Notes under the pieces: model-generated
Told to the model about the DNA's origin: nothing
What the model saw: only the letters and a program-made list of their open reading frames with translations
Databases searched by the model: none
Shown here: one piece after another, positions 3,430-60,725 of the stretch
Position numbering within the stretch: the stretch's first letter is position 1
Layout of the letters: each line of letters begins with the position of its first letter
Source of the DNA: Octopus sinensis
Lineage: Eukaryota
Direction of reading: 5' to 3'
Assembly: GCF_006345805.1 (NCBI RefSeq)
Contig: NC_043015.1
Span: forward strand, 1,178,001-1,242,000
DNA length: 64,000 nt
Program-made: the position numbers and the translations under genes

Positions 3430-3641
3430 CTCTGTTACTCTCTGTTACTTGTTTCAGTCATTTGACTGCGGCCATGCTGGAGCACAGCTTTTAGTCGAGC
3501 AAATCGATCCCGGGACTTATTCTTTGTAAGCCCAGTACTTATTCTATCGGTCTCTTTTTGCCGAACCGCTAAGTGACGGGGACGTAAACACACCAGCATC
3601 GGTTGTCAAGCAATGCTAGGGGGACAAACACAGACACACAA

Positions 3642-3688
<47 letters not shown>

Positions 3689-3848
3689 TACGACAGGCTT
3701 CTTTCAGTTTCCGTCAACCAAATCCACTCACAAGGCATTGGTCGGCCCAAGGCTATAGCAGAAGACACTTGCCCAAGATGCCACGCAGTGGGACTGAACC
3801 CGGAACCATGTGGTTGGTTAGCAAGCTACTTACCACACAGCCACTCCT
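3430..3848 (-). mobile_element. tRNA-derived SINE family A (CORE-like centre), full length
   Basis: Minus-strand head aggagtggctgtgtggtaagtagcttgct...gggttcagtcccactg gives A-box/B-box-like motifs. Centre c(a)tcttgggcaagtgtc, internal (TA/TG)n tract, tail aatgactgaaacaagtaa. About 12 copies in the window. Confidence 0.9.
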
Positions 3849-11862: not shown

Positions 11863-12022
11863 GTCAGTGGTAAGAAGCTTGCTTACAAACTACATGGTTC
11901 CGGGTTCATTCCCACTTAGTGGCACCTTGGGCAAGTTTCTTCTACTATAGCCTCGGGCTGACCAAATCCTTGTGAGTGGATGTGGTAGACAGAAACTGAA
12001 AGAAGCAGTCGTATATATGTAT

Positions 12023-12083
<61 letters not shown>

Positions 12084-12335
12084 ATATATATATATATATA
12101 TAAATATGTGTGTGTGTGTATGTGTGTGTATGTTTGACACATCGCTTGAAAACCGATGTTGGTGTGTTTACGTCCCCGTCACTTAGCGGTTCGGCAAAAG
12201 AGACCGATAGAATATGTACTAGGCTTACAAAGAAAAAGTCCTGGGGTGGATATGCTCGACTAAAGGCGGTGCTCTAGCATGGCCACAGTCAAATGACTGA
12301 AACAATTAAATGAGAGTAAAAGAGAGTAAAGAGAG
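11863..12335 (+). mobile_element. SINE family A
   Basis: Head gtggtaagaagcttgct...gggttcattcccac; centre accttgggcaag; tail aaatgactgaaacaa; expanded internal (TA)n. Confidence 0.9.
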
Positions 12336-12824: not shown

Positions 12825-12985
12825 ATATTTTTTTCTCTCCTTGTTTTTTTCTGTGTATCGTTCTGTCGAAGAGCGTAGGATCGAAACATAAAATACTTTT
12901 TCTATTCCTGAGCGCTATACTAATACATTTGTTTGTTTTATCCACCTGCCTTCGTCTTTTGTTTATTTTCGTAAACTTTCCCTTT
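12825..12985 (+). mobile_element. Family F2 HHR-bearing element, degenerate
   Basis: CUGUCGA-A-GAGC-GUAG-GAUC-GAAA-CAUA at 12863-12890. Downstream ttcctgagcgctatactaatacatttgtttg...ccttcgtcttttgtttattttc matches 41350-41440. Confidence 0.75.
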
Positions 12986-13014
12986 ATAAAGATATATATA
13001 TATATATATATAAT

Positions 13015-13754: not shown

Positions 13755-14075
13755 GTATATATGTGTGTGTGTGTGTATGTGTATATGTGTGTGTGTATAG
13801 ATAGATATACAGATATAGATATAGATGTAGACAGAGATATAGACGTTTCTTATTTCATATCCAAACTTTTATATTAATATATTCAATGTTTCTAAATTGT
13901 TTGTCTTCCTTATTGCATCTAAACCGTTTTGTTCCCTCGTGTAGGTTTTCTTTACCTCGTCGAATCGTTCCCTGTAAAGGCATCGGCGTCTAAGTTTGAA
14001 TCATTTGATCATTACGAAGTGTCTTCTATACAGAGAATCCTTGGATCTCATTTGAGGACGACATACATACATACA

Positions 14076-14484
14076 TACTCTTTTACTCTTTTACTTGTTT
14101 CAGTCATTTGATGGTAGCCATGCTGGAGCACCGCATTTAGTCGAGCAAATTGACCCCGGGACTTATTCTTTGTAGGCCCAGTACTAATTCTATCGGTCTC
14201 TTTTGCCGAACCGCTAAGTGACGGGGACATAAACACACCAGTATCGGTTGTCAAGCAATGCTAGGGGGACAAACACAGACACACAAACACACACACGCGT
14301 ATATATATATATATATATACATATATACGACAGGCTTCTTTCAGTTTCCGTCTACCAAATCCACTCACAAAGCATTGGTCGGCCCGGGGCTATAGCAGAA
14401 GACGCTTGCCCAAGGTGACACGCAGTGGAACTTAAGCCGGAACCATGTGGTTCGTTAGCAAGCTACTTACCACACAGCCAATCC
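14076..14484 (-). mobile_element. SINE family A
   Basis: Colinear with 3430-3848. Confidence 0.9.
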
Positions 14485-14505
14485 TGCACCTACATGCATA
14501 TATTT

Positions 14506-16340: not shown

Positions 16341-16495
16341 AGGTGTGGCTGTGTGGTAAGTAGCTTGCTTACCAACCACATGGTTCCGGGTTCAGTCCCA
16401 ATGCGTGGCAACTTGGGTAAGTGTCTTCTACTATAGGCTCGGGCAGAAAAAACCTGTGAGTGGATTTGGTAGTCGAAAACTGAAATAAGCTCGTC

Positions 16496-16544
<49 letters not shown>

Positions 16545-16790
16545 AGTGAGAGAGAGAGTGTGTGTGAGTGAGAGAGAGAGTGTGTGAATGCTTGTATGTC
16601 TGTGTTTGTTTCCTGACCGTCGCTTGACAACCGATGTTGATGTCTTTACTTTCCCGTAATTTAGTGGTTCAGCAAAAGAGACCGATAAGATAAGTAAAAG
16701 GCTTGCAAAGTATAGGTCCTGGGGTGGGTTTGTTCGACTAAAAGGGGTGCTCCAGCATGACCTCAGACAAATGACTGAAACATATAAAAA
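16341..16790 (+). mobile_element. SINE family A
   Basis: Head ggtgtggctgtgtggtaagtagcttgcttaccaaccacatggttccgggttcagtccca; tail atgactgaaaca. Confidence 0.9.
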
Positions 16791-16814
16791 AGGAAAGAAA
16801 AGAATGCAGATATT

Positions 16815-17000: not shown

Positions 17001-17030
17001 ACATTTCGAAAATGCAGATATATATATATG

Positions 17031-17241
17031 TAACAGGAAGCTTTATGAAAATAAACAAAAGACGAAGGCAGGTGGAATACAAACAAACAATTGTACTAGT
17101 ATGGCGCTTAGGAATATAAATAAAACGAGTCTTTTACGTTTGGAGCCTACGCTCTTCAACAGAAGATACACAGAAAAGAAACACGGAGAGAAACAAGGAA
17201 GAAAAAATGCGTGCAGAAGCTAGCGAATCAACATGGCGATC

Positions 17242-17242
<1 letters not shown>
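17031..17242 (-). mobile_element. Family F2 element, full length, flanked by (TA)n on both sides
   Basis: Reverse complement of 41231-41446 from agatcgccatg to the 3' end. HHR CUGUUGA-A-GAGC-GUAG-GCUC-CAAA-CGUA (G12 mutated). Confidence 0.85.
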
Positions 17243-23710: not shown

Positions 23711-23895
23711 GCGCAGGCGTGGCTGTGTGCTAAGAAGCTTGCTTCCCATCCACATCGTTCCAGTTTTAGTCCCACTATGTGACACATTCGGCAGGTGTCT
23801 TCTACTATAGCCTCAGGGCGATTAAAGCCTTCCGAATAGATTCGGTTGACAGAAACTGAAAGAAGCCCGTCGTATATATGTATATATATATATAT
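23711..23895 (+). mobile_element. SINE family A, 5' half only
   Basis: ggcgtggctgtgtgctaagaagcttgct...aaactgaaagaagcccgtcg, ending in the internal (TA)n. Confidence 0.8.
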
Positions 23896-24686: not shown

Positions 24687-24945
24687 GAGGCGCGTGGCTT
24701 AGTGGTGTGGGTGTCAGCACCATGATCGTAAGATTGTGGTTTCGATTGTTGGACCGGGCGACGTGTTGTGTTCTTGAGAAAAACAGATCATTTCACGTTG
24801 CTCTAGTCTACTCAGCTGGCAAACATGAGTAACGCTGCGATGGACTGGCGTCTCGCCCAGCTCAGGAACACATACGCCATTAAAACCGGGAAACCAGGCC
24901 CAAGAGCCTGGCTAGGCTTTAAGAAAGGGTGCATTTATTTATTTA
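24687..24945 (+). mobile_element. SINE family B
   Basis: gaggcgcgtggcttagtgg...ggtttcgatt...ctcagctggc...aggctttaagaaagggtgca; matches 10169-10417. Confidence 0.9.
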
Positions 24946-24947
24946 TT

Positions 24948-25017
<70 letters not shown>

Positions 25018-25059
25018 ATATATATAATATATAGTACCGTCAAAAAATGTGGCATTGCG

Positions 25060-25791
25060 ATGGGTACCAAGGCTGCACCAGTCCTTGCGAACCTCATAAT
25101 GGGTTACTTCGAACTGTCACTCTATGAAATATCAAGCCAGAAATTTGGACATGCTTTCCACACCTACCTAATGGAAAACTGGGAAAGGTATTTAGATGAT
25201 TGTTTCATCATATGGAAAGAACCTTATGAAAAACTCCTGGAATTCAAAACCATACTAAACAACATACATCCCAACATCCAATTCATTATGGAATTAAGCA
25301 AACATCATCTCCCATTCCTTGATCTCCTAATTATAAAAACACCTAAGAACCAAATTATAACAGACATCTACCACAAACCTACAGACTCACAACAATACCT
25401 CCTCTTTAGTTCATGCCATCCAAAACACACCAAGACAAATATCCCTTTCAATTTAGCTAAAAGGGTATGCACCATTGTCTCGGATCCAAAAACACGAGAA
25501 ATACGCCTTCAAGACCTCAAAAAAACACTATTACAACGTCAATATCCCTCCACCCTTATAGAGTATGGAATAAAACACGCCAAAGAACTAGACAACACTA
25601 CACTGAAAACCACCCAACCTAACACCACACACAACCTCAAAATACTTCCATACATTCCACCCACAACCACAAAAATATCGAAGCATACACCACAATCATA
25701 CAAAACCTCAGTCTACTGTCAACAGACCCAAAATGAAAACACTATAAATACACACAAAATCCTCAATGCAAAAGGCAACACAAATCTTTAA
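25060..25791 (+). pseudogene. Penelope-type reverse transcriptase, C-terminal part and thumb
   Basis: YRQK-(+1 A)-CGIAMGTKAAPVLANLIM (PLE motif B'), RYLDDCF (catalytic YxDD), LPFLDLLI, IYHKPTDSQQYLLFSSCHPKHTKTNIP (PLE thumb). Frameshifted near the end. Confidence 0.9.
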
Positions 25792-25848
25792 AAAAACTCT
25801 TGACAAATGCCAAACTTCACACACCACATCCACCCACAACAGTAAAAA

Positions 25849-26343
25849 AATGTGCACGCTCAAACTGTGGTACCTGCCCCTTTCTACTTGAAGGCTCTGA
25901 ATTTACCTTCAAACAAGTGCGAAGTTAAAATCAAGACTAACTTCTCCTGTTCCTCCGAGAACCTTATCTACGTTCTCACATGCGCTGGTTGCCAACATAA
26001 TTATGTTGGACAAACGAGTCTCCCGTTACGTAAACGAGTAACGGTGCATAAAGAACAAATAAATCTCCCGGAATACCGACAAATTCCACTGAGTGACCAC
26101 TTAGACTCATGTGCTAAAGACTTAAACCCCAAATTCTATATATTCCCCTTCTACCAATGTAAAGACGTGATCACCACACAGGAGAGAATTAACAAGGAGA
26201 ATCTCTTTATTGAAAAATTCCAATATGCAAACTCCTCGTTGATCAAACTTCCTTTCTCTGCCTCACTCTTCATGGATGGACTAACACAAATATATAAAGA
26301 TACCATGCATTCATCACTTCAAGCTAAAACTTATATTCTTTAA
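25849..26343 (+). pseudogene. Cys-rich linker plus GIY-YIG endonuclease of the Penelope-like element
   Basis: An alternate frame from ~25849 reads KCARSNCGTCPF (C-x4-C-x2-C). The ORF frame has TNFSCSSENLIYVLTCAGCQHNYVGQTSLPLRKRVTVH (GIY-YIG signature) and RINKENLFIEKF. Confidence 0.88.
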
Positions 26344-28015: not shown

Positions 28016-28422
28016 CAATGTGGCTGTGTGGTAAGTAGCTTGCTTACGAACCACATGCTTCCGGCTTCAGTCCCACTCTCTGGCAACTTGGTCAAATGTC
28101 TTCTACTATAGCCTCGGGCCGACCAAAGCCATATGAGTGGATTTGATAGGCAGAAACTGAAAGAAGCCCGTCGTATATGTATATATATTTTTATATATAT
28201 GTGTGTGTATATGTTTGTGTGTGTCTGTGTTTGCCCCCCCCCCAACATCGCTTGACATCCGATGCTGGTGTGGTTACGTCCGCGTAACTTAGCAGTTCGG
28301 CAAAAAAAACCGATAGAATAAGTACTAGGCTTGCAAAGAATAAGTCCTGGGGGTCGATTTGGTCGACTGAAGGTGGTGCTCCAGCATGGCCACAGTCACA
28401 TGACTGAAACAAGTAAAAGAGT
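28016..28422 (+). mobile_element. SINE family A
   Basis: Colinear with the other copies; tail tgactgaaacaagtaaaagagt. Confidence 0.9.
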
Positions 28423-28439
28423 ATGTGTGTGTGCATACG

Positions 28440-28471
<32 letters not shown>

Positions 28472-31439: not shown

Positions 31440-32510
31440 TACAAGAGTTTGCTGAAAGCTTCGTGGCTTTAGCTGTATCGTGAAAGGGTAGAGCTTCTAC
31501 ATTCACAGGGTAGGTAGGGCAGTTATTTAGGAGAATATACGCAAAAGAACAGGATTGTATACAATATATCTTTCTCTTTGTTTGCAGATCTAATGAATCA
31601 TGGGAACCCCGACGGTGGATTTTTGTAAAAGTGAAGCATAGAAGAGCATAAACTTCATCCATTTGTAAGGGAAAGGAGTGACGGAAATCTATAGCAAGGT
31701 GAAGGACGGCTTGAAGAATGAGAGCTTATCTTACTCCAGAGTGTAAATCTGGGTGTCAAGGTTTGGTCATTTCGAGATAACACATAAACCTTATTCAGGA
31801 CAGCCAACTTCCTCGACCACAGAGGACAAATCCAATGTTGTAAACGTCAGGATTCTCGAAGACTACCGTAATCCAGCTGAAGTCATGGCCGAGACTCGGA
31901 GGATTTCCCGCGAAGGAGTTGACCACATTATCCGCAACACTCTGGACATGAGAAAGATTTCCATCAAATGGGTGCTATAATGCCTGAACGCTTAGAAGAA
32001 GCGCGTCCGATTGACGACGTCAAAGTCAATTTTGGGTCGGTTTGAGTAGGAGAGGCTGATTGTATGGCTTTTTAGTCACCATCGATGAAACTTGGCTTCA
32101 TCACCATGACCTCCAGACCAAGCAGCTATGAATGGGATGGAATCACAGCCGTTCCTCGCGTCCCATGTAGTTTTAGAACCAGAAGTCGGCTGGAAAAATT
32201 TTGGCTTCAGTGTTTTGGACAAAGATGGAATAAATCTTATAAAGGGTTGCACCATCAATGCTTCTCTCTGTTTGAGGAACTATGCGAAAGACTGAAGAAG
32301 AAAGGAAATTCATCCGATTCGGAAATGATCGTTGTTACAGAAACCTGTTTGGAGTCCGAAATTTCCGAGGTCTTTTGTCAGGGCTTAGAACAATTAAAGG
32401 ATCACTGTGTGTGAATCTTAGAGGAGAGTATGTTGAATAAAATCATAATTAATTGATCCTCCTCTATTATCTTTTACCCAAAGCCAGAAACATTACGGCA
32501 CCCGCTCGCA
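31440..32510 (+). mobile_element. Decayed mariner-family (Tc1/mariner) DNA transposon with internal deletion
   Basis: HTH region ending KISIKWVL (WVPxxL motif), VTIDETW (first catalytic D), SAGKILASVFW, KGCTIN, C-terminus GEYVE*. Degenerate TIRs at ~31440-31470 and ~32482-32510. Stops and frameshifts. Confidence 0.85.
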
Positions 32511-34245: not shown

Positions 34246-34370
34246 ATTCATTGTAAGCCTAGTACTTATTCTATCGGGCTCTTTTATCGAACCGCTAATT
34301 CCGGGGAGATAAACACAGCAACATCAGTTGTCAAGCGCCGATCGGTAAAAACACAGAAACACAAACAATT
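34246..34370 (-). mobile_element. SINE family A, internal fragment
   Basis: ttgtaagcctagtacttattctatcgg...aaacacagcaacatcagttgtcaagcg. Confidence 0.75.
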
Positions 34371-34424
34371 CCATATACATATATATTTATATATATACAT
34401 GCATACATATATATATATATATAT

Positions 34425-34668
34425 GCCTTGTGAGTGGATTTGGTAGACGGAAACTGAAAGAAGCCTGTCGTATGTATGTATATATATATGTATGCGTGTG
34501 TTTGTGTGTCTGTGTTTGTCCCCCTGGCATTGCTGGTGTGTTTAGGTCCTCGTCACTTAGTGGTTCGGCAAAAAGAGACCGATAGAATAAGTACTAAAAG
34601 GTGGTGCTCCAGCATGGCCGCAGTCAAATGACTGAAACAAGTAAAAGAGTAAAAGAGTAAAGAGAGAG
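34425..34668 (+). mobile_element. SINE family A, 5'-truncated, ~40-bp internal deletion
   Basis: Starts gccttgtgagtggatttgg; gtacta joined directly to aaaggtggtg; tail (gtaaaaga)n. Confidence 0.85.
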
Positions 34669-34682
34669 TATATATATATATA

Positions 34683-34715
<33 letters not shown>

Positions 34716-34795: not shown

Positions 34796-35080
34796 AGGCG
34801 CAATGGCCCAGTGGTTAGGGCAGCGGACTCGCTGTCGTAGGATCGCGGTTTCGATTCCCAGACCGGGCGTTGTGATTGTTTATTGAGCGAAAACACCTAA
34901 AAGCTTCACGAGGCTCCTGCAGGGGGTGGTGATCCCTGCTGTACTATTTCACCACTCTTTCTTCTGTTGGCCTGCTCGCTTAGCCAGTAGGATGGCGTCA
35001 TTTGAAGGCTAAAGCAATGCGAACGCATTGTGACCAGCGATGTGTAAGAACATCTGATGGTCTGGCCGGTAACGTGATCA
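34794..35080 (+). mobile_element. tRNA-derived SINE family D
   Basis: A box tggcccagtgg, B box ggtttcgattccc; centre ttgagcgaaaacacctaaa. Related heads at 44900 and 55855. Confidence 0.85.
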
Positions 35081-38150: not shown

Positions 38151-38723
38151 ACGCATACATCACAGCGTATCTTTGGAAATGACGACCTTCGCATGCGTTT
38201 GTATATATCTTTTTATGACTTTCACTCCATATTAGTCATACTTAACATTACGGTGAGAATGAAAGCAAACACGGATTTAGGCAAGAAATGATGAAAGAAA
38301 TCTAGTCAGATAGGGACGAATGAGCAAACATACTTAGCAATGATTATTGTTTATAAAGAAAAGCATCTGGAAAACCAGTGCTAAAAAATTATAGATTTTT
38401 ATTTATTTTTATTGCGGAGATGACCAATAGAGACAAAATGAAAGAGAGAGAGGCACACAGACAGATAGCCACTGAGAGACAGAGACAGAGAGGGAGAGAC
38501 AGAGCAAGCTATGGATATGTACATATAAGCAGATATGTATGTAGGTGTATATATATACTTACATGCATATACACATGAATACATACATACATACATACAT
38601 ACCTATATACCTGTAAACAGATGGATAGTAGATAGATTACATAGAGAGATAGATCGATAAAGAGACAGACAGATATATATGTGTGTATATATATATATAT
38701 ATATAATATATATATATATACAT

Positions 38724-39125
38724 ACTCTTTTTTTTTTTACTTGTTTCAGTCATTTGACTGCGGCCATGCTGGAGCACCACCTTTAATCGAGCAACTCGAC
38801 CCCGGGACTTATTCTTTGTAAGGCCAGTACTTATTCTATCGGACTATTTTGCCGAACCGCTAAGTGACGGGGGCGTAAACACACCAGCATCGGTTGTCAA
38901 GCTATGCTAGGGGGATAAACACAGACACACAAACACACACACGCACAAACATATATATACATATATAGGACGGGCTTCTTTCAGTTTCCGTCTACCTAAT
39001 CCACTCATAAGGCTTTGGTCGGCCCGAGACTCTAGTAGAAGACACTTGCCCAAGGTGCCACGCAATGGGACTGAACCTTGAACCATGTGGCTGGTAAGCA
39101 AGCTACTTACCAGACAGCCACTCCT
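38724..39125 (-). mobile_element. SINE family A
   Basis: Colinear with 3430-3848. Confidence 0.9.
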
Positions 39126-39890: not shown

Positions 39891-40351
39891 TTTTTTTTAA
39901 ATGTTTTGCTATATAAATGTGTTGTTTTTCTTATAATACCAGAATCAGATTTTTTGAAGATACTCATTCGAAAAGCACCCTTTATATATTTCTTTGCTTT
40001 TAAATGCAATCTGTTTTATAACCTATGTCTTCATGCGGATGCATCTATTTCTATATGTCTGTTAAAATGGATGTGTGTATGTGTTTGTGCAAGGCTTAAG
40101 GTATTTACACTTTTTTTTACGTGCCTAACACTTCGTATTTGTTCATAAAAAAGAAACACTCGTACCTAGGTGTATTCATATAAACATTTTAAAAGGTTGC
40201 GAACACATCCACCCCACCTCACACACACACAGGGTCACGAAGATTTATAGACACATATACAGTTACACACAGACACGCATGCACACCTATATATGTAAAG
40301 ATATATGCACATATTGACATATACACAGAGGTATATATGTATACATATATA

Positions 40352-40398
<47 letters not shown>

Positions 40399-40486
40399 GT
40401 ATATATATATATGTATGTATATATATATGTATATATATATGTATGTATATATATATGTATATATATAAGTATATGTATTTATATAT

Positions 40487-41065
40487 ATCACAATCAAGGA
40501 ACGGCCATAATAGGCCATTCACCCACTAGAAATAACAGCCAAAGCTTCAACCGCAAAATAACATCAATTCCGTAAACCAGGAGAAAATTAAAAAACATTT
40601 ACCCTGTAATTTCTTATACGATGCACCGTTTCATCTACTGTTTAATGGTAAACTAACCTGATTAAATTAAATCAAGCCAATCTCCATAGGCCCTTAGAAT
40701 CGTCAGTAAGAAATAGCCAAGTCGGAACAGATATTTTCACGAGGCATTTCTGTCCCTGCCTCGGCAATATCTGACCTAAAATTTTCAAATCATCGCACTC
40801 GCGCCAAATTTATCGGCAGCAAATAAATATAAGCCGCCGATTCCATTGCGGAATTAACCAGAAAATTCATAATTAATCAATATAGGGTGGCAAAAAATTT
40901 CGTAGAATTTTTTTGCCACCAGCGGCCTAGTGGGAAAAAATTAAATAGTCATAGACCATTTTTAAGTTCAACATCACAATCAAGGAACGGCCATAATAGG
41001 CCATTCACCCACTAGAAATAACAGCCAAAGCTTCAACCGCAAAATAACATCAATTCCGTAAACCA
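40487..41065 (-). mobile_element. Retrozyme-like element: 486-bp unit with identical 93-bp terminal redundancy and an internal HHR
   Basis: 40487-40579 is identical to 40973-41065. The interior is non-coding and rich in hairpins, with an HHR at 40609-40714. The minus-strand 3' end runs into a (TA)n-rich tract. Confidence 0.75.
40609..40714 (-). ncRNA. Type I hammerhead ribozyme with 8-bp stem I and extended loop II
   Basis: AUUUCUUA-CUGACGA-UUCUA...UAGAU-GAAA-CGG-UGCA-UCGU-A/UAAGAAAU. Stem I 8 perfect bp, stem III 4 bp with palindromic UGCA loop, GUA site at 40619-40617. Stem II is 4 bp with a U-U opposition at 10.1/11.1. Confidence 0.8.
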
Positions 41066-41230
41066 TACGACATTAGACATCGCATCATACATACATACAC
41101 ACGACCAGACCTTTCATACGCACTTATACACACACGCACCCTTATGTTGGGGCGAAGTTATTTGACCCTGTCATCTCCCCTATTTTCGCTCTTGCGTCTC
41201 ACGTTTGATCTCCGACTTCTGGCCAGGATC

Positions 41231-41444
41231 AGATCGCCATGTTGAATCGCTAGCTTCTGCAGGCATTTTTTTTTTCTCTCCTTGTTTCTCTCCGTGTTTC
41301 TTTTCTGTGTATCTTTCTGTTGAAGAGCGTAGGCTCGAAACGTAAAAGACTTGTTTTATTTATATTCCTGAGCCCCATACTAATACAATTGTTTGTTTGT
41401 ACTCCCTACCTTCGTCTTTTGTTTATTTTCATAAAGTTTTCCCG

Positions 41445-41446
<2 letters not shown>
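41231..41446 (+). mobile_element. Family F2 HHR-bearing element, full length
   Basis: Matches 17031-17242 (reverse complement) end to end; followed by (TA)n. Confidence 0.85.
41312..41349 (+). ncRNA. Minimal HHR-like motif with non-canonical U6
   Basis: UCUUU-CUGUUGA-A-GAGC-GUAG-GCUC-GAAA-CGU-A/AAAGA. Stem I 5 bp, stem II 4 bp, ACGU palindrome; only A6 deviates from the core consensus. Confidence 0.6.
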
Positions 41447-41482
<36 letters not shown>

Positions 41483-44225: not shown

Positions 44226-44325
44226 NNNNNNNNNNNNNNNNNNNNNNNNNNNNNNNNNNNNNNNNNNNNNNNNNNNNNNNNNNNNNNNNNNNNNNNNNNN
44301 NNNNNNNNNNNNNNNNNNNNNNNNN
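44226..44325. other. Assembly gap (100 N)
   Basis: Exactly 100 N, typical of a placeholder of unknown size. Flanks end and start in caacag-type repeats. Confidence 0.99.
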
Positions 44326-44899
44326 CAACAGATCGACCTACCCTTAAAACAGAATCTGCTCTACTGCTATTTCCATAATATGTGTTTACATTCCTGCGTA
44401 TTCTCACCACACATTAAGAATGGGGATTCCCAACGAGCTTTTATATTCGTAAAAATTCTCCGTTTCCACGAATAGTTTTTTAATAACTGCGAACCCTATA
44501 AAACGCCATGCAGCTGACACGATTTTCAATTCCTCTTCTTGCTGCTTTAAATGCCTCGTCCATTATTTAATGCCAGCAGTGTTTTTCTCAATACAGGACA
44601 GCCTTTTTCATCAACGATGAACATGTGCGCATCCGCCATTACATCTATTATGCATATACTTAGAAATATTCATATACAATCACATACATACTTGCGCGTG
44701 TGCACATGTATGTTTACAAAAATAAATTTACACACATAGACATGCATATATACACGCGCGTGCATACAAAATACATAAACTATATACACTAACACAAAGA
44801 AAGCCCTCGCATGCACACAAAAAGAAACCCCCACAAAAACAGAAACCACTACTCAAAATTGCATGTACACTTTATAATATTGTGCATGTATGTGACTGG

Positions 44900-45295
44900 T
44901 ACGCCGACAGTGATTAGGGCAGCGGTCTCACGGTCGTATGAACGCGGTTTCGATTCCGAAACCGGGCTTTGTGAGTGTTTATTGAGCAAAAACACCCAAG
45001 CACCACGAGGCTCCGGCGGGGTGGGTGGTGGTGAACCCCGCTGTACTCTTTCACCACAACTTTCTTTCACTCTTTCTTCCTACTTCTGCCACAAAGCAGA
45101 GGAACCATGGTGTAACCCACTATGGTGTCGTAAACTTTCAGACCCTAGTCTAGATTGTGAATCCTCTGTACCCCAGGATGGTTCAACTCTCCACCAGTTA
45201 AAAGCCACGGAATGAGGATAACAACGTAGGTTCGCGCCCGTGTAACCACCAGTCTATCGAGTGTGGTGGATGGATCTTCAAGTTGCCACGCACAA
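44900..45295 (+). mobile_element. SINE family D head and centre with a distinct tail
   Basis: gtgattagggcagcggtctcacggtcg...ggtttcgattcc...ttgagcaaaaacacc...ctgtactctttcaccacaac. Tail boundary uncertain. Confidence 0.7.
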
Positions 45296-54025: not shown

Positions 54026-54385
54026 GCGCAAGAGTGGCTGTGTGGTAAGAAGCTTGCTTCCCAACCACACGGTCCTGGGTTTAGTTTCACTCGGGCCGAC
54101 CAAAGCTTTGTGAGTGGATTTGGTAGACGGAAACTGAAAGAAGCCCCTCGTATATATATATTTATGTATATGTATGTGTGTACTTGTTATTTGTGTCTGT
54201 GTTTGTCCCACCACAATCGCTAGACAACAGATGTTGGTGTGTTTACGTCCCAGTTACGTAGCGGTTCGGCCAAAGGGATCGTTTTAATAAGTACTGGGCT
54301 TACAAAGAATAAGTCGTAGGGTTGATTTGTTCAACTAAACGTGGTGCTGCAGCATGGCCACAGTCAAATGACTAAAACAAGTGAA
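54026..54385 (+). mobile_element. SINE family A with a deletion in the CORE-like segment
   Basis: tttagtttcac joined directly to tcgggccgaccaaagc; the rest is colinear. Confidence 0.85.
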
Positions 54386-55854: not shown

Positions 55855-56160
55855 ACACATGGCCTAGTGGTTAGGGCAGCAGTCTCGCGGTCGAAGGATC
55901 GTGGTTTCGAATCTCAGACCGAGTGATGTGTGTGCTTATGAGCGAAACACCTAAACTCCACGACTCTCCAGCAGAAGGTAACGGCGAGCATCTGCTGACT
56001 CCTTCGCCACAACTTTCTCTCTTTCTTTCCTCCTGCATCTTGCATCTCACCTGCGACGGACCGATGTCATGTCCATGTGGGGAACCTATACGCCAAGCAA
56101 ACCTAGATACCGGCCCTTATGAGCCAGGCATGGCTCGCGAAGGAACAAGCAACAACAACA
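55855..56160 (+). mobile_element. SINE with family D head and family B-like tail
   Basis: Head atggcctagtggttagggcagc...ggtttcgaatc. Tail gcgacggaccgatgtcatgtccatgtggggaacctatacgcc...ggcccttatgagcc resembles 24837-24910. Confidence 0.7.
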
Positions 56161-59906: not shown

Positions 59907-60325
59907 ATAGGAGTAGCTGTGGGGTAAGTAGCTTGCTCACGAACCACATAGTTTCGGGTTCAGTCCCACTGCATGGCACCTTGGGCAAGTGATTTCTACT
60001 TTATCCTTGGGCTGACTAAATCTTGTGAATGGATTTGGTAGACGGAAACTGAAAGAAGCCCGTCGTATATATGCTTATATATATATATATAAGTGTGTGT
60101 GTGTGCGCGCGTGTGTATGTTTGTGTGTCTGTGTTTGTCCACCCAACATCGCTAGACAACCGATGCTGGTGTGTTTATGTCCCCGTAGCTTAATGGTCGG
60201 CAAAATAGAGCGATATAATAAGGACTAGGCTTACTAAGAATAAGTCATTGGGTCGATTTGCTCGACTAAAGGCGATGCTGCAGCATGGCCACAGTCACAT
60301 GACAGAAACAAGTTAAAAGAAAAAG
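59907..60325 (+). mobile_element. SINE family A
   Basis: Head ggagtagctgtggggtaagtagcttgct...gggttcagtcccactg; centre accttgggcaagt; tail gacagaaacaag. Confidence 0.88.
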
Positions 60326-60725
60326 ATGTGTGTGTGAATGTATGTAAGTATGCATGAATTTATTTATGTATGCGTATGTGAGGAGGAGGCGCATGTATAT
60401 GTGCGCGTGTGTGTGAGTGTCACTGTAGATATCAAGAAACTGTCAGATGAGACAGAGATTGTTGATGTGTAATAGTTTATGATATAATACCATTCCCATT
60501 AAGAAGACAACCATGTCATTCATCAAGAAAATTACGACGAACCGAGACGCCAATGATGGTGAGCATGGCGACGACCGCGACTATGATGATGGCGATGAAC
60601 ATGAGCATGAGGTGGAAGAAGAGGAACGGGTTGAGGGAGATGAAGATGATGGTCACCATGACGGTGAGGATGAGTCTGAGGACGAGTGAGATGATAATGA
60701 AGCTAATAATGAAGATTACTGTCGC

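What the first reader, a model, noticed from the sequence alone, without database searches (positions are those of the whole stretch)
40487..41065. Retrozyme-like integrant: 486-nt hammerhead unit copied ~1.2 times (circular-RNA signature)
Seen: two identical 93-bp direct repeats (40487-40579, 40973-41065; period 486) enclose a non-coding interior. The minus strand of the interior carries a type I hammerhead: 8-bp stem I AUUUCUUA/UAAGAAAU, CUGACGA and GAAA cores, and a GUA site at 40619-40617. There is no TG...CA pair, primer-binding site or polypurine tract, so it is not an LTR/TRIM element. The minus-strand 3' end runs into (TA)n. Established: animal non-LTR retrozymes are small non-coding type I HHR repeats that yield circular RNAs and are thought to be mobilised by Penelope-like elements. 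Inference: exact terminal redundancy with a single ribozyme is what reverse transcription running past its start on a 486-nt circle (or on a multimer) would leave, and the identical repeats suggest a recent event. I do not know of this family being described; 486 nt is long for the class. Weak point: U-U at positions 10.1/11.1, where a purine-pyrimidine pair is usual.
Basis: partly seen in the sequence, partly recalled or inferred. Interest (0 to 1): 0.92.

Follow-up and report, generated by a model that had tools for sequence, protein, structure and literature searches.

The report
Hammerhead-bearing retroelement copy in octopod DNA
A 579-bp non-coding insert in an octopus-like genome carries a well-formed self-cleaving "hammerhead" RNA motif and is built like the small parasitic elements (retrozymes, copied by Penelope-like elements) already known in other animals; it is probably a new local example of a known kind, and I could not find out whether other copies exist.

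Summary
Two identical 93-bp direct repeats (40487-40579, 40973-41065; period 486) enclose a non-coding interior. The minus strand carries a complete type I hammerhead motif (40714-40609; GUA cleavage site at 40619-40617). My descriptor finds only this site in about 109 kb of real octopod sequence searched on both strands. Shuffles give 0.015 hits per 64 kb.

The best reading is a non-autonomous, hammerhead-bearing retroelement of the animal non-LTR retrozyme / Penelope-like-element (PLE) kind, inserted at a (TA)n microsatellite as a short 5'-truncated copy plus one full 486-nt unit.

- Such terminal redundancy (a "pseudo-LTR") is the general hallmark of PLE-type insertion, even in clades without ribozymes. 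It is not specific to a circular template.
- 486 nt lies within the published size range (51-972 bp).
- A U-U pair at the base of helix II has a precedent in about 60,000 axolotl motifs.

Weaknesses: Rfam does not call the motif, and the locus holds only one ribozyme, so it cannot release a unit-length RNA by itself. No second copy could be found, because no accessible collection holds octopod DNA.

Verdict: probable new member of a known kind; moderate-to-low interest.

The parts
40487..40579 (-). 93-bp direct repeat, copy 1. In RNA (minus-strand) sense these are the last 93 nt of the full 486-nt unit. Its 3' end abuts the (TA)n microsatellite.
   Evidence: family D6, 100 % identity, spacing 486.
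40580..40972 (-). 393-bp non-repeated interior of the unit. It is non-coding, strongly structured, and contains the hammerhead motif.
   Evidence: Folding z = -5.0 for the interior alone and -6.1 for the 486-nt unit folded as a circle (linear folds). There are no ORFs above 45 aa on the minus strand or 60 aa on the plus strand, and none has relatives.
40973..41065 (-). 93-bp direct repeat, copy 2. In RNA sense this is the upstream 5'-truncated partial copy (a 'pseudo-LTR'). It carries no ribozyme.
   Evidence: Parsed following the PLE insertion architecture described in PMC8557442.
40609..40714 (-). Type I hammerhead ribozyme motif, 106 nt. Helix I: 40714-40707 paired with 40616-40609 (8 bp). 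Core C3-A9, CUGACGA: 40706-40700. Helix II with a long extension: 40699-40633 (U-U, then 4 bp, an internal loop, then an imperfect extension of 4 + 14 bp with a bulged A). G12-A14: 40632-40630. Helix III: 40629-40618 (4 bp, palindromic loop UGCA). A17: 40617.
   Evidence: Sequence reading. Only descriptor hit in the window and in 109 kb of real sequence. Helix I and the helix II extension appear in the unconstrained MFE. The hammerhead-constrained fold is -25.6 kcal/mol against an MFE of -29.1. Not called by Rfam.
40616..40617 (-). Predicted self-cleavage (and re-ligation) site, GUA|U. It lies between A17 (40617) and U1.1 (40616).
   Evidence: Follows from the hammerhead numbering applied to the motif. 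Not tested experimentally.
40886..40920 (.). Largest simple hairpin of the unit: GGUGGCAAAAAA ... UUUUUUGCCACC, a 12-bp stem.
   Evidence: Self-match in blastn and present in both strand folds.
40334..40486 (.). TA/TG-type microsatellite directly abutting the element's 3' end in RNA sense. Probable insertion target.
   Evidence: TRF and sequence. A (TA)n insertion bias of PLEs is reported in PMC8557442. The evidence is weak: 12 % of window positions lie within 30 bp of a perfect (TA)6+ run.
24916..26343 (+). Context, not part of the element. A degenerate, 5'-truncated Penelope-like element with an RT-like ORF, a CX4CxxC linker and a GIY-YIG endonuclease. It represents the class of enzyme thought to mobilise such units.
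   Evidence: Pfam GIY-YIG, E 3.7e-4, just below the curated cut-off. Cephalopod PLE relatives at 51-62 % identity. Linker read. No sequence similarity to the 486-nt unit.

Best explanation
The 579-bp segment is one integrated copy of a small, non-coding, hammerhead-bearing retroelement of the animal non-LTR retrozyme / non-autonomous Penelope-like-element kind, in an Octopus-like genome.

Inferred life cycle:
1. Master copies, probably tandem, are transcribed on the strand that is 'minus' here.
2. The type I hammerhead cuts after GUA, giving 486-nt monomers.
3. These monomers, or partly processed multimers, or circles closed by a host RNA ligase, are reverse-transcribed by a PLE reverse transcriptase primed at a nick made by its GIY-YIG endonuclease in a (TA)n microsatellite.
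4. As is usual for PLE-type insertion, the product is a short 5'-truncated copy (93 nt) followed by one full unit. That gives the two identical 93-bp repeats.

Shown: the repeat, the motif and its statistical significance, the strong RNA structure, the lack of coding capacity, the microsatellite junction, and the presence of PLEs in this genome.

Inferred: ribozyme activity, the RNA intermediate, the mobilising enzyme, and the existence of sister copies.

This particular locus has a single ribozyme, so it can be cut once but cannot release a unit-length or circular RNA. It is most likely a dead-end daughter copy.
For: - Exact 93-bp repeats with period 486.
- Complete hammerhead core, correct helix topology and a GUA site. 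It is the only such site in 109 kb of real sequence on both strands. Shuffles expect 0.015 per 64 kb and 3.5e-4 per element.
- The unit is unusually structured: z = -6.1 as a circle, -6.15 and -5.8 for the two strands as linear RNA.
- No coding capacity and no protein relatives in any frame. No tRNA.
- GC is 36-41 %, within the published range below 45-50 % (PMC7229834).
- The 3' end abuts a TA microsatellite.
- A PLE remnant with a Neptune/Nematis-type CX4CxxC linker lies in the same window.
- Literature support: partial tandems (pseudo-LTRs), (TA)n bias and often undetectable target-site duplications for PLEs and their non-autonomous derivatives (PMC8557442); retrozyme consensus lengths of 51-972 bp, frequent monomers and relatedness to PLE pseudo-LTRs (bioRxiv 10.64898/2026.07.22.740005); the U-U precedent at the base of helix II and retrozymes in a mollusc (PMC7229834); enlarged helix II and palindromic loop 3 in PLE and metazoan hammerheads (PMC4209133).
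Against: - No second copy was found anywhere: none in the window, none in 44 kb of Octopus sinensis and Argonauta hians DNA, none in DNA scans, and none through the protein index. These searches had little power.
- Rfam hammerhead models give no match even at E <= 10.
- 10.1/11.1 is U-U rather than a Watson-Crick pair.
- Helix II is 67 nt long, and there are no recognisable loop 1 / loop 2 contacts.
- A competing fold that sequesters part of the core is 3.5 kcal/mol more stable.
- The unit shows no similarity to the PLE remnant in the window or to two cephalopod PLE loci.
- The locus holds only 1.19 units and one ribozyme, so it does not meet the tandem definition of a retrozyme.
Confidence: 0.6

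Rival explanations
1. Only the 393-bp interior (40580-40972) is the mobile element, and it still carries the hammerhead. The 93-bp repeats would then be an unusually long target-site duplication of host DNA, created by widely staggered nicks during target-primed reverse transcription.
For: PLE target-site duplications are of variable length because the distance between first- and second-strand nicks varies (PMC8557442). The 93-nt segment alone is not significantly structured (z = -1.5), and its pairing with the interior is no better than 17 % of shuffles. One boundary of the duplication still lies at the (TA)n tract.
Against: 93 bp is far longer than the duplications described for these elements. 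Partial-tandem pseudo-LTRs are the documented norm (PMC8557442). The 93-bp segment (GC 41 %) resembles the interior rather than the microsatellite on either side of it. The interior would end in no recognisable tail.
Confidence: 0.12
2. The structure arose at DNA level or in the assembly. Either it is the remnant of a longer 486-bp tandem (satellite-like) array cut down by deletion, or it is a tandem array collapsed by the assembler to 1.19 units. It would then not be the direct product of one retro-insertion.
For: Animal retrozymes are by definition tandem arrays, from dimers to hundreds of units (PMC7229834; bioRxiv 10.64898/2026.07.22.740005). Identical repeat units are what assemblers collapse. 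The window comes from a scaffolded assembly with a 100-N gap 3 kb away.
Against: Both ends are sharp and lie in unique or microsatellite sequence, with no degenerate unit fragments beyond them. Monomers and short forms are common for these families. Nothing in the sequence itself signals a collapse.
Confidence: 0.15
3. The hammerhead-like motif is fortuitous or long dead, and the segment is an ordinary local duplication of structured non-coding DNA with no RNA-based life cycle.
For: There is no Rfam match. There is a U-U at 10.1/11.1, a very long helix II and a more stable competing fold. There is no second copy and no other ribozyme family on either strand.
Against: The chance of the whole motif is about 3.5e-4 per element, and nothing comparable occurs in 109 kb of real sequence. 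All invariant core positions (C3, U4, G5, A6, G8, A9, G12, A13, A14, A15.1-U16.1, H17) are present. A simple DNA duplication gives adjacent copies, not two 93-bp copies separated by 393 bp.
Confidence: 0.08

Closest known systems
Animal non-LTR retrozymes (Cervera & de la Pena 2020, PMC7229834), in particular the Mytilus galloprovincialis units of about 350-390 bp
   Same: Small, non-coding, AT-rich unit carrying one type I hammerhead per unit. It has no LTR, PBS or PPT and a strongly structured RNA. The host is a mollusc. The mussel hammerheads also lack most canonical loop 1 / loop 2 contact nucleotides.
   Different: This locus holds only 1.19 units with a single ribozyme, not a tandem of two or more. 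Helix II carries an insertion of about 55 nt, and helix I is a perfect 8-bp stem without a loop 1 bulge. Family size and RNA circles are unknown. Rfam does not recognise the motif.
Axolotl HHR_Amex2 motifs (PMC7229834)
   Same: U-U mismatch at the base of helix II, and a helix III capped by a tetraloop. The paper describes palindromic tetraloops for HHR_Amex1 and for metazoan type I hammerheads generally; here the loop is UGCA.
   Different: Amex2 has a 2-bp helix III and works best as a dimer. Here helix III has 4 bp, so a monomeric ribozyme is conceivable. There is no sequence relationship.
Pseudo-LTR architecture of Penelope-like elements and their non-autonomous derivatives, e.g. MRC1 of Chlamydomonas (Craig et al. 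2021, PMC8557442; Cervera & de la Pena 2014, PMC4209133)
   Same: A 5'-truncated copy followed head-to-tail by a full copy, insertion at a microsatellite, no discernible target-site duplication, and a hammerhead associated with the terminal region.
   Different: No similarity between the unit and any PLE 3' end I could reach. The ribozyme lies just outside the 93-bp repeated part rather than inside the pseudo-LTR. PLE hammerheads are usually 'minimal', with almost no helix III, unlike this one.
Plant LTR retrozymes and TRIM/SMART small LTR elements
   Same: Direct terminal repeats flanking a short non-coding interior.
   Different: No TG...CA ends, no PBS or PPT, and no 4-6-bp target-site duplication. 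The ribozyme is type I and lies outside the repeats, whereas plant retrozymes carry a type III hammerhead in each LTR.

Membership tests
Hammerhead ribozyme, type I | Invariant catalytic core: C3 U4 G5 A6 N7 G8 A9 ... G12 A13 A14, with an A15.1-U16.1 pair | tested here: met
   CUGACGA at 40706-40700. GAA at 40632-40630. A15.1 (40629) pairs with U16.1 (40618).
Hammerhead ribozyme, type I | Three helices around the core, with helix I open (5' and 3' ends in helix I) | tested here: met
   Helix I has 8 bp. Helix II has 4 bp plus an extension. Helix III has 4 bp plus a tetraloop.
Hammerhead ribozyme, type I | Cleavage triplet N-U-H (H is not G) | tested here: met
   G-U-A at 40619-40617.
Hammerhead ribozyme, type I | Watson-Crick pair at 10.1/11.1 (usually G-C) | tested here: not met
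   U-U. The same mismatch is documented in axolotl HHR_Amex2, which has weak activity (PMC7229834).
Hammerhead ribozyme, type I | Loop 1 / loop 2 tertiary contacts of canonical metazoan motifs | tested here: inconclusive
   Helix I has no bulge or loop within its 8 bp. An internal loop leading to a long hairpin replaces 'loop 2'. Mussel retrozyme hammerheads also lack the canonical contact nucleotides (PMC7229834).
Hammerhead ribozyme, type I | Scores at or above the Rfam gathering threshold for a hammerhead model | tested here: not met
   No hammerhead match at gathering score or at E <= 10. The likely cause is the 67-nt helix II.
Hammerhead ribozyme, type I | Site-specific self-cleavage | not testable with these tools
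   Needs in vitro transcription. The catalytic fold is 3.5 kcal/mol above the MFE.
Animal non-LTR retrozyme | Head-to-tail tandem of at least two units, each with a hammerhead | tested here: not met
   This locus has 1.19 units and one hammerhead. Monomeric derivatives are reported as common (bioRxiv 10.64898/2026.07.22.740005).
Animal non-LTR retrozyme | Multi-copy, dispersed family in the genome | not testable with these tools
   No further copy in the 64-kb window or in 44 kb of cephalopod DNA. The DNA collections evidently hold no octopod DNA. The protein-index searches were null.
Animal non-LTR retrozyme | Small non-coding unit, low GC (below 45-50 %), no LTR/PBS/PPT | tested here: met
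   486 nt. GC is 36 % in the interior and 41 % in the repeat. No ORF with relatives. No TG...CA. The PBS/PPT check was by eye only.
Animal non-LTR retrozyme | Expressed as linear and circular unit-length RNA | not testable with these tools
   No expression data are available here.
Non-autonomous derivative of a Penelope-like element | Partial-tandem insertion: a 5'-truncated copy plus a full copy (pseudo-LTR) | tested here: met
   The A-B-A structure with exact 93-bp A parses as a truncated copy plus a full unit (PMC8557442).
Non-autonomous derivative of a Penelope-like element | Insertion into microsatellites, with target-site duplication often not discernible | tested here: met
   The element abuts a TA-type microsatellite and shows no duplication. 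This is weak: 12 % of positions lie near a (TA)6+ run.
Non-autonomous derivative of a Penelope-like element | Sequence similarity to the terminus or pseudo-LTR of an autonomous PLE | tested here: inconclusive
   No similarity to the truncated PLE remnant in the window or to PLE loci L001 and L002. No full-length octopod PLE with its termini was available.
Non-autonomous derivative of a Penelope-like element | PLEs present in the same genome | tested here: met
   RT-like, CX4CxxC and GIY-YIG remnant at about 24.9-26.3 kb.
LTR retrotransposon / TRIM / plant LTR retrozyme | TG...CA LTR ends, PBS, PPT and a short fixed target-site duplication | tested here: not met
   The repeat reads AT...CA on the plus strand and TG...AT on the minus strand. 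The sequences next to the repeats are not tRNA-complementary or purine tracts in the right positions, and there is no duplication (by eye).

The most novel reading that the evidence does not exclude
The element could belong to a still-active cephalopod retrozyme family with two unusual traits. Its hammerhead would be atypical: a perfect 8-bp helix I, U-U at 10.1/11.1, and a roughly 55-nt hairpin inserted in loop 2, which makes it invisible to Rfam models. Its 1.19-unit integrants, with permuted ends, would directly record reverse transcription running more than once around a 486-nt circular RNA. That would be natural evidence for the rolling-circle step that is only postulated for animal retrozymes.
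Probability: 0.15. Interest if true: 0.55.

Novelty: new member of a known kind. Interest (0 to 1): 0.3.

Why it matters
If confirmed as a family, this would extend retrozymes to cephalopods. It would also add a hammerhead variant that standard covariance models miss, which implies that Rfam-based censuses undercount such ribozymes; the 235 Hammerhead_1 loci reported for the giant squid (PMC6962438) are one such census. A set of integrants with differently permuted ends would also bear on an open question: whether PLE reverse transcriptases copy circular or multimeric templates. As a single locus with no comparative or expression data, it does not change what is known. The class, its link to Penelope-like elements, the pseudo-LTR architecture and the U-U variant are all published.

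Tried and rejected
**Searches that led nowhere**
- Rfam scans of the whole window at gathering score and of the local region at E <= 10 found no hammerhead or other ribozyme. The only matches were low-complexity miRNA-like hits in the microsatellite.
- Rfam on two cephalopod PLE loci found no hammerhead, so there is no local yardstick.
- Exact look-ups of three small ORFs of the unit and of the GIY-YIG ORF in the assembly index found none on record.
- Protein-index searches with the 60-aa stretch, and then with all stop-free stretches of all six frames joined together, found nothing.
- Exact DNA scans of metagenome contigs (2) and viral contigs (3) with four different 22-27-mers of the unit gave 0 hits. 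These collections evidently lack octopod DNA.
- BLAST of the unit against Octopus sinensis and Argonauta hians loci found nothing.
- Sensitive blastn and nhmmer for a diverged copy in the window found nothing. The weak hits at 35.8-36.3 kb are A-rich noise.
- I tried to reconstruct the empty site from paralogous repeats. The nearest dispersed repeat starts 165 bp to the right, so this was impossible.
- A folding test of whether the 93-nt segment belongs to the RNA unit was inconclusive.

**Explanations considered and rejected**
- tRNA-derived SINE: no tRNA, and the A/B-box resemblance seen by eye is unconvincing.
- Helitron: no CTRR 3' end.
- LTR/TRIM element: no TG...CA, PBS or PPT.
- C/D-box snoRNA: the Afu_514 hit scores 24.9 bits against a gathering score of 39 and is probably chance.

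**Step not taken**
- I did not fish for copies through large octopus gene loci. The expected yield was too low for the remaining look-ups.
Full report
**Observation**

The window contains two 93-bp direct repeats, 40487-40579 and 40973-41065. They are 100 % identical and 486 bp apart start to start (confirmed by blastn). The identity stops abruptly at both ends. This gives an A-B-A structure of 93 + 393 + 93 = 579 bp, or 1.19 copies of a 486-bp unit.

- Helix I: AUUUCUUA (40714-40707) pairs with UAAGAAAU (40616-40609).
- Core: CUGACGA (40706-40700).
- Helix II: opens with U-U, continues with 4 bp (UCUA/UAGA), then an internal loop, then an imperfect extension of 4 + 14 bp with one bulged A (40699-40633).
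- GAA at 40632-40630.
- Helix III: ACGG/UCGU closed by the palindromic tetraloop UGCA (40629-40618).
- The triplet GUA at 40619-40617, with cleavage expected between 40617 and 40616.

**Is the motif more than chance?**

I wrote a permissive type I hammerhead descriptor. It requires CUGANGA, GAAA, U-H, helix I of at least 5 bp, helix II of at least 3 bp and helix III of at least 2 bp. It allows a mismatch at 10.1/11.1 and a helix II of up to 90 nt.
- In the whole 64-kb window, on both strands, it hits only this site.
- 200 dinucleotide-preserving shuffles of the window gave 0.015 hits on average, and none with helix I of 8 bp or more.
- 20,000 shuffles of the 579-bp element gave a hit in 0.035 % of cases.

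Shuffling destroys natural hairpins, so I also used real sequence as background. In 108,668 bp (the window plus two cephalopod loci), searched on both strands, the site remains the only hit at standard settings. At very relaxed settings the other hits have minimal helices (4/2/2 bp), against 8/4/4 here. At the sequence level the motif is therefore real.

On the other hand, Rfam 15 reports no hammerhead, or any other ribozyme, at gathering score or at E <= 10 with lax filters on the local kilobase. The most likely reason is the 67-nt helix II, but I could not test a shortened version.

Helix I and the helix II extension appear in the unconstrained minimum-energy fold. However, that fold pairs ACGAU of the core with AUCGU of helix III. 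The hammerhead-constrained fold is 3.5 kcal/mol less stable, at -25.6 against -29.1 kcal/mol. Catalysis is plausible but not established.

**The unit as a whole**

- The unit is non-coding. The longest stop-free stretches are 60 aa on the plus strand and 45 aa on the minus strand. No frame has a relative among 5.8 billion protein clusters.
- It contains no tRNA.
- GC is 36 % in the interior and 41 % in the repeat.
- It is much more structured than shuffles. As linear RNA the 486-nt unit has z = -6.15 (minus strand) and -5.8 (plus strand). As a circle it has z = -6.1, with 61 % of bases paired.

**Source and surroundings**

The window is AT-rich (34 % GC), packed with microsatellites and holds no convincing host exon.

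An RT-like ORF at 25060-25791 has cephalopod proteins as its best relatives (Argonauta hians, Octopus sinensis) at 51-62 % identity. A SINE-like repeat with 11 further copies or fragments in the window also occurs in an Octopus sinensis locus at 75-88 % identity. The source is therefore an Octopus-like octopod.

That RT-like ORF is followed, after a frameshift, by a CX4CxxC linker and a GIY-YIG ORF at 25852-26343 (Pfam E 3.7e-4, just below the curated cut-off). This makes it a degenerate C-terminal-endonuclease Penelope-like element (PLE), of the Neptune/Nematis type by the criterion of Craig et al. (PMC8557442). It shares no sequence with the 486-nt unit.

**Comparison with what is published**

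Animal non-LTR retrozymes are short, AT-rich, non-coding repeats with one type I hammerhead per unit. [quoted passage not shown] A 2026 preprint gives consensus lengths of 51-972 bp. It also reports widely varying proportions of monomeric copies and phylogenetic relatedness to PLE pseudo-LTRs (10.64898/2026.07.22.740005).

PLEs and their non-autonomous derivatives typically insert as a 5'-truncated copy followed head-to-tail by a full copy. This creates pseudo-LTRs. They prefer microsatellites, (TA)n for some clades, and their target-site duplications often cannot be discerned. All of this also holds for clades without hammerheads (PMC8557442).

Metazoan type I hammerheads typically have a 4-bp helix II and a helix III capped by a small palindromic loop. 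PLE hammerheads often have an enlarged helix II (PMC4209133). A U-U at the base of helix II characterises the roughly 60,000 axolotl HHR_Amex2 motifs, which self-cleave weakly (PMC7229834). Mussel retrozyme hammerheads lack the canonical loop-loop contact nucleotides (PMC7229834). Hammerhead_1 loci have already been annotated in a cephalopod genome (PMC6962438).

**Interpretation**

Read in RNA (minus-strand) sense, the locus is a 93-nt 5'-truncated copy (41065-40973) followed by one full 486-nt unit (40972-40487). The 3' end of that unit abuts a TA-type microsatellite. This is the PLE insertion architecture.

The best explanation is an integrated copy of a hammerhead-bearing, non-autonomous retroelement of the retrozyme/PLE kind. 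I give it a confidence of 0.6 for that specific reading. I estimate about 0.8 for the broader statement that this is a hammerhead-bearing repeat element of that class.

The integrant spans exactly one intact cleavage site, so its template was either uncleaved there or re-ligated. It ends 37 nt short of where a second site would be (position 41102 by extrapolation). That is compatible with a circle, and equally with a partly processed linear multimer.

With only one ribozyme, this locus can be cut once but cannot release a unit-length RNA. It would be a dead-end daughter copy.

The claim of recency rests on zero differences in 93 bp. That allows up to 3.2 % pairwise divergence at 95 %. The insertion is therefore younger than the SINE-like copies (12-29 % diverged), but it need not be recent in absolute terms.

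Adjacency to (TA)n is weak evidence in this genome, because 12 % of positions lie within 30 bp of a perfect (TA)6+ run.

**Rivals**

1. The 93-bp repeats are a very long target-site duplication around a 393-bp insert. The folding test was inconclusive: the 93-nt segment alone has z = -1.5, and its energy gain with the interior is matched by 17 % of shuffles. I think this is unlikely because of the length.
2. The structure is a remnant of a longer tandem array, or an array collapsed by the assembler.
3. The motif is fortuitous or dead, sitting in an ordinary duplication. The statistics argue against this.

**What could not be done**

The decisive test is whether sister copies exist, with permuted ends and conserved or co-varying helices. 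It was out of reach.
- There is no second copy in the window or in 44 kb of cephalopod DNA.
- Exact scans of the metagenome and viral collections found nothing.
- The protein-indexed routes found nothing.

These nulls have little power, because none of the DNA collections appears to hold octopod genomes and short non-coding repeats are rarely called as genes.

**Verdict**

This is probably a new member of a known kind: a cephalopod representative of retrozyme/PLE-derived elements, with a hammerhead variant that Rfam misses. Interest is moderate to low. It would rise if a family with permuted integrants and circular RNA were demonstrated.

Noticed in passing
window 24916-26343 (+): Degenerate, 5'-truncated Penelope-like element. 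It has an RT-like ORF at 25060-25791, a CX4CxxC linker ('CARSNCGTC') in another frame near 25.85 kb, and a GIY-YIG ORF at 25852-26343. It begins right after a (TA)n run, and no hammerhead lies next to it.
   Followed up: partly
window 38673-39125, plus copies or fragments at 3445-3848, 11868-12310, 14063-14485, 16341-16798, 23715-23889, 28020-28471, 34246-34715, 54090-54385 and 59909-60346: A SINE-like dispersed repeat of about 450 bp, at 71-88 % identity between copies. It is also present several times in the Octopus sinensis locus L001, which is what places the window in an Octopus-like genome.
   Followed up: partly
window 44851-45250, 34809-34963, 55866-56040: A second dispersed repeat, whose translation suggests a tRNA B-box-like GGTTCGATTCC. 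It may be a tRNA-derived SINE.
   Followed up: no
window 41231-41460, 17018-17242, 12829-12999: A third short dispersed repeat (83-90 % identity). It starts 165 bp to the right of the element and is not adjacent to the insertion.
   Followed up: no
window about 31747-32411 (+): Stop-free stretches that look like a frameshifted mariner/Tc1-type transposase remnant. This is a reading of the translations only and was not tested.
   Followed up: no
window 44226-44325: A run of exactly 100 N, which is a scaffolding gap. The window therefore comes from a scaffolded assembly, so collapsed repeats are possible.
   Followed up: no
window 40464-40571 and 40947-41057 (-): The 93-bp repeat gives a weak sub-threshold match to a fungal C/D-box snoRNA model (Afu_514: 24.9 and 16.7 bits against a gathering score of 39). 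It is probably chance.
   Followed up: no
L001 3675-3788 (-): A 114-nt near-perfect hairpin in the Octopus sinensis locus matches a plant miRNA model (MIR9486) at 59 bits, below the gathering score of 100. It is probably an inverted-repeat (MITE-like) element.
   Followed up: no
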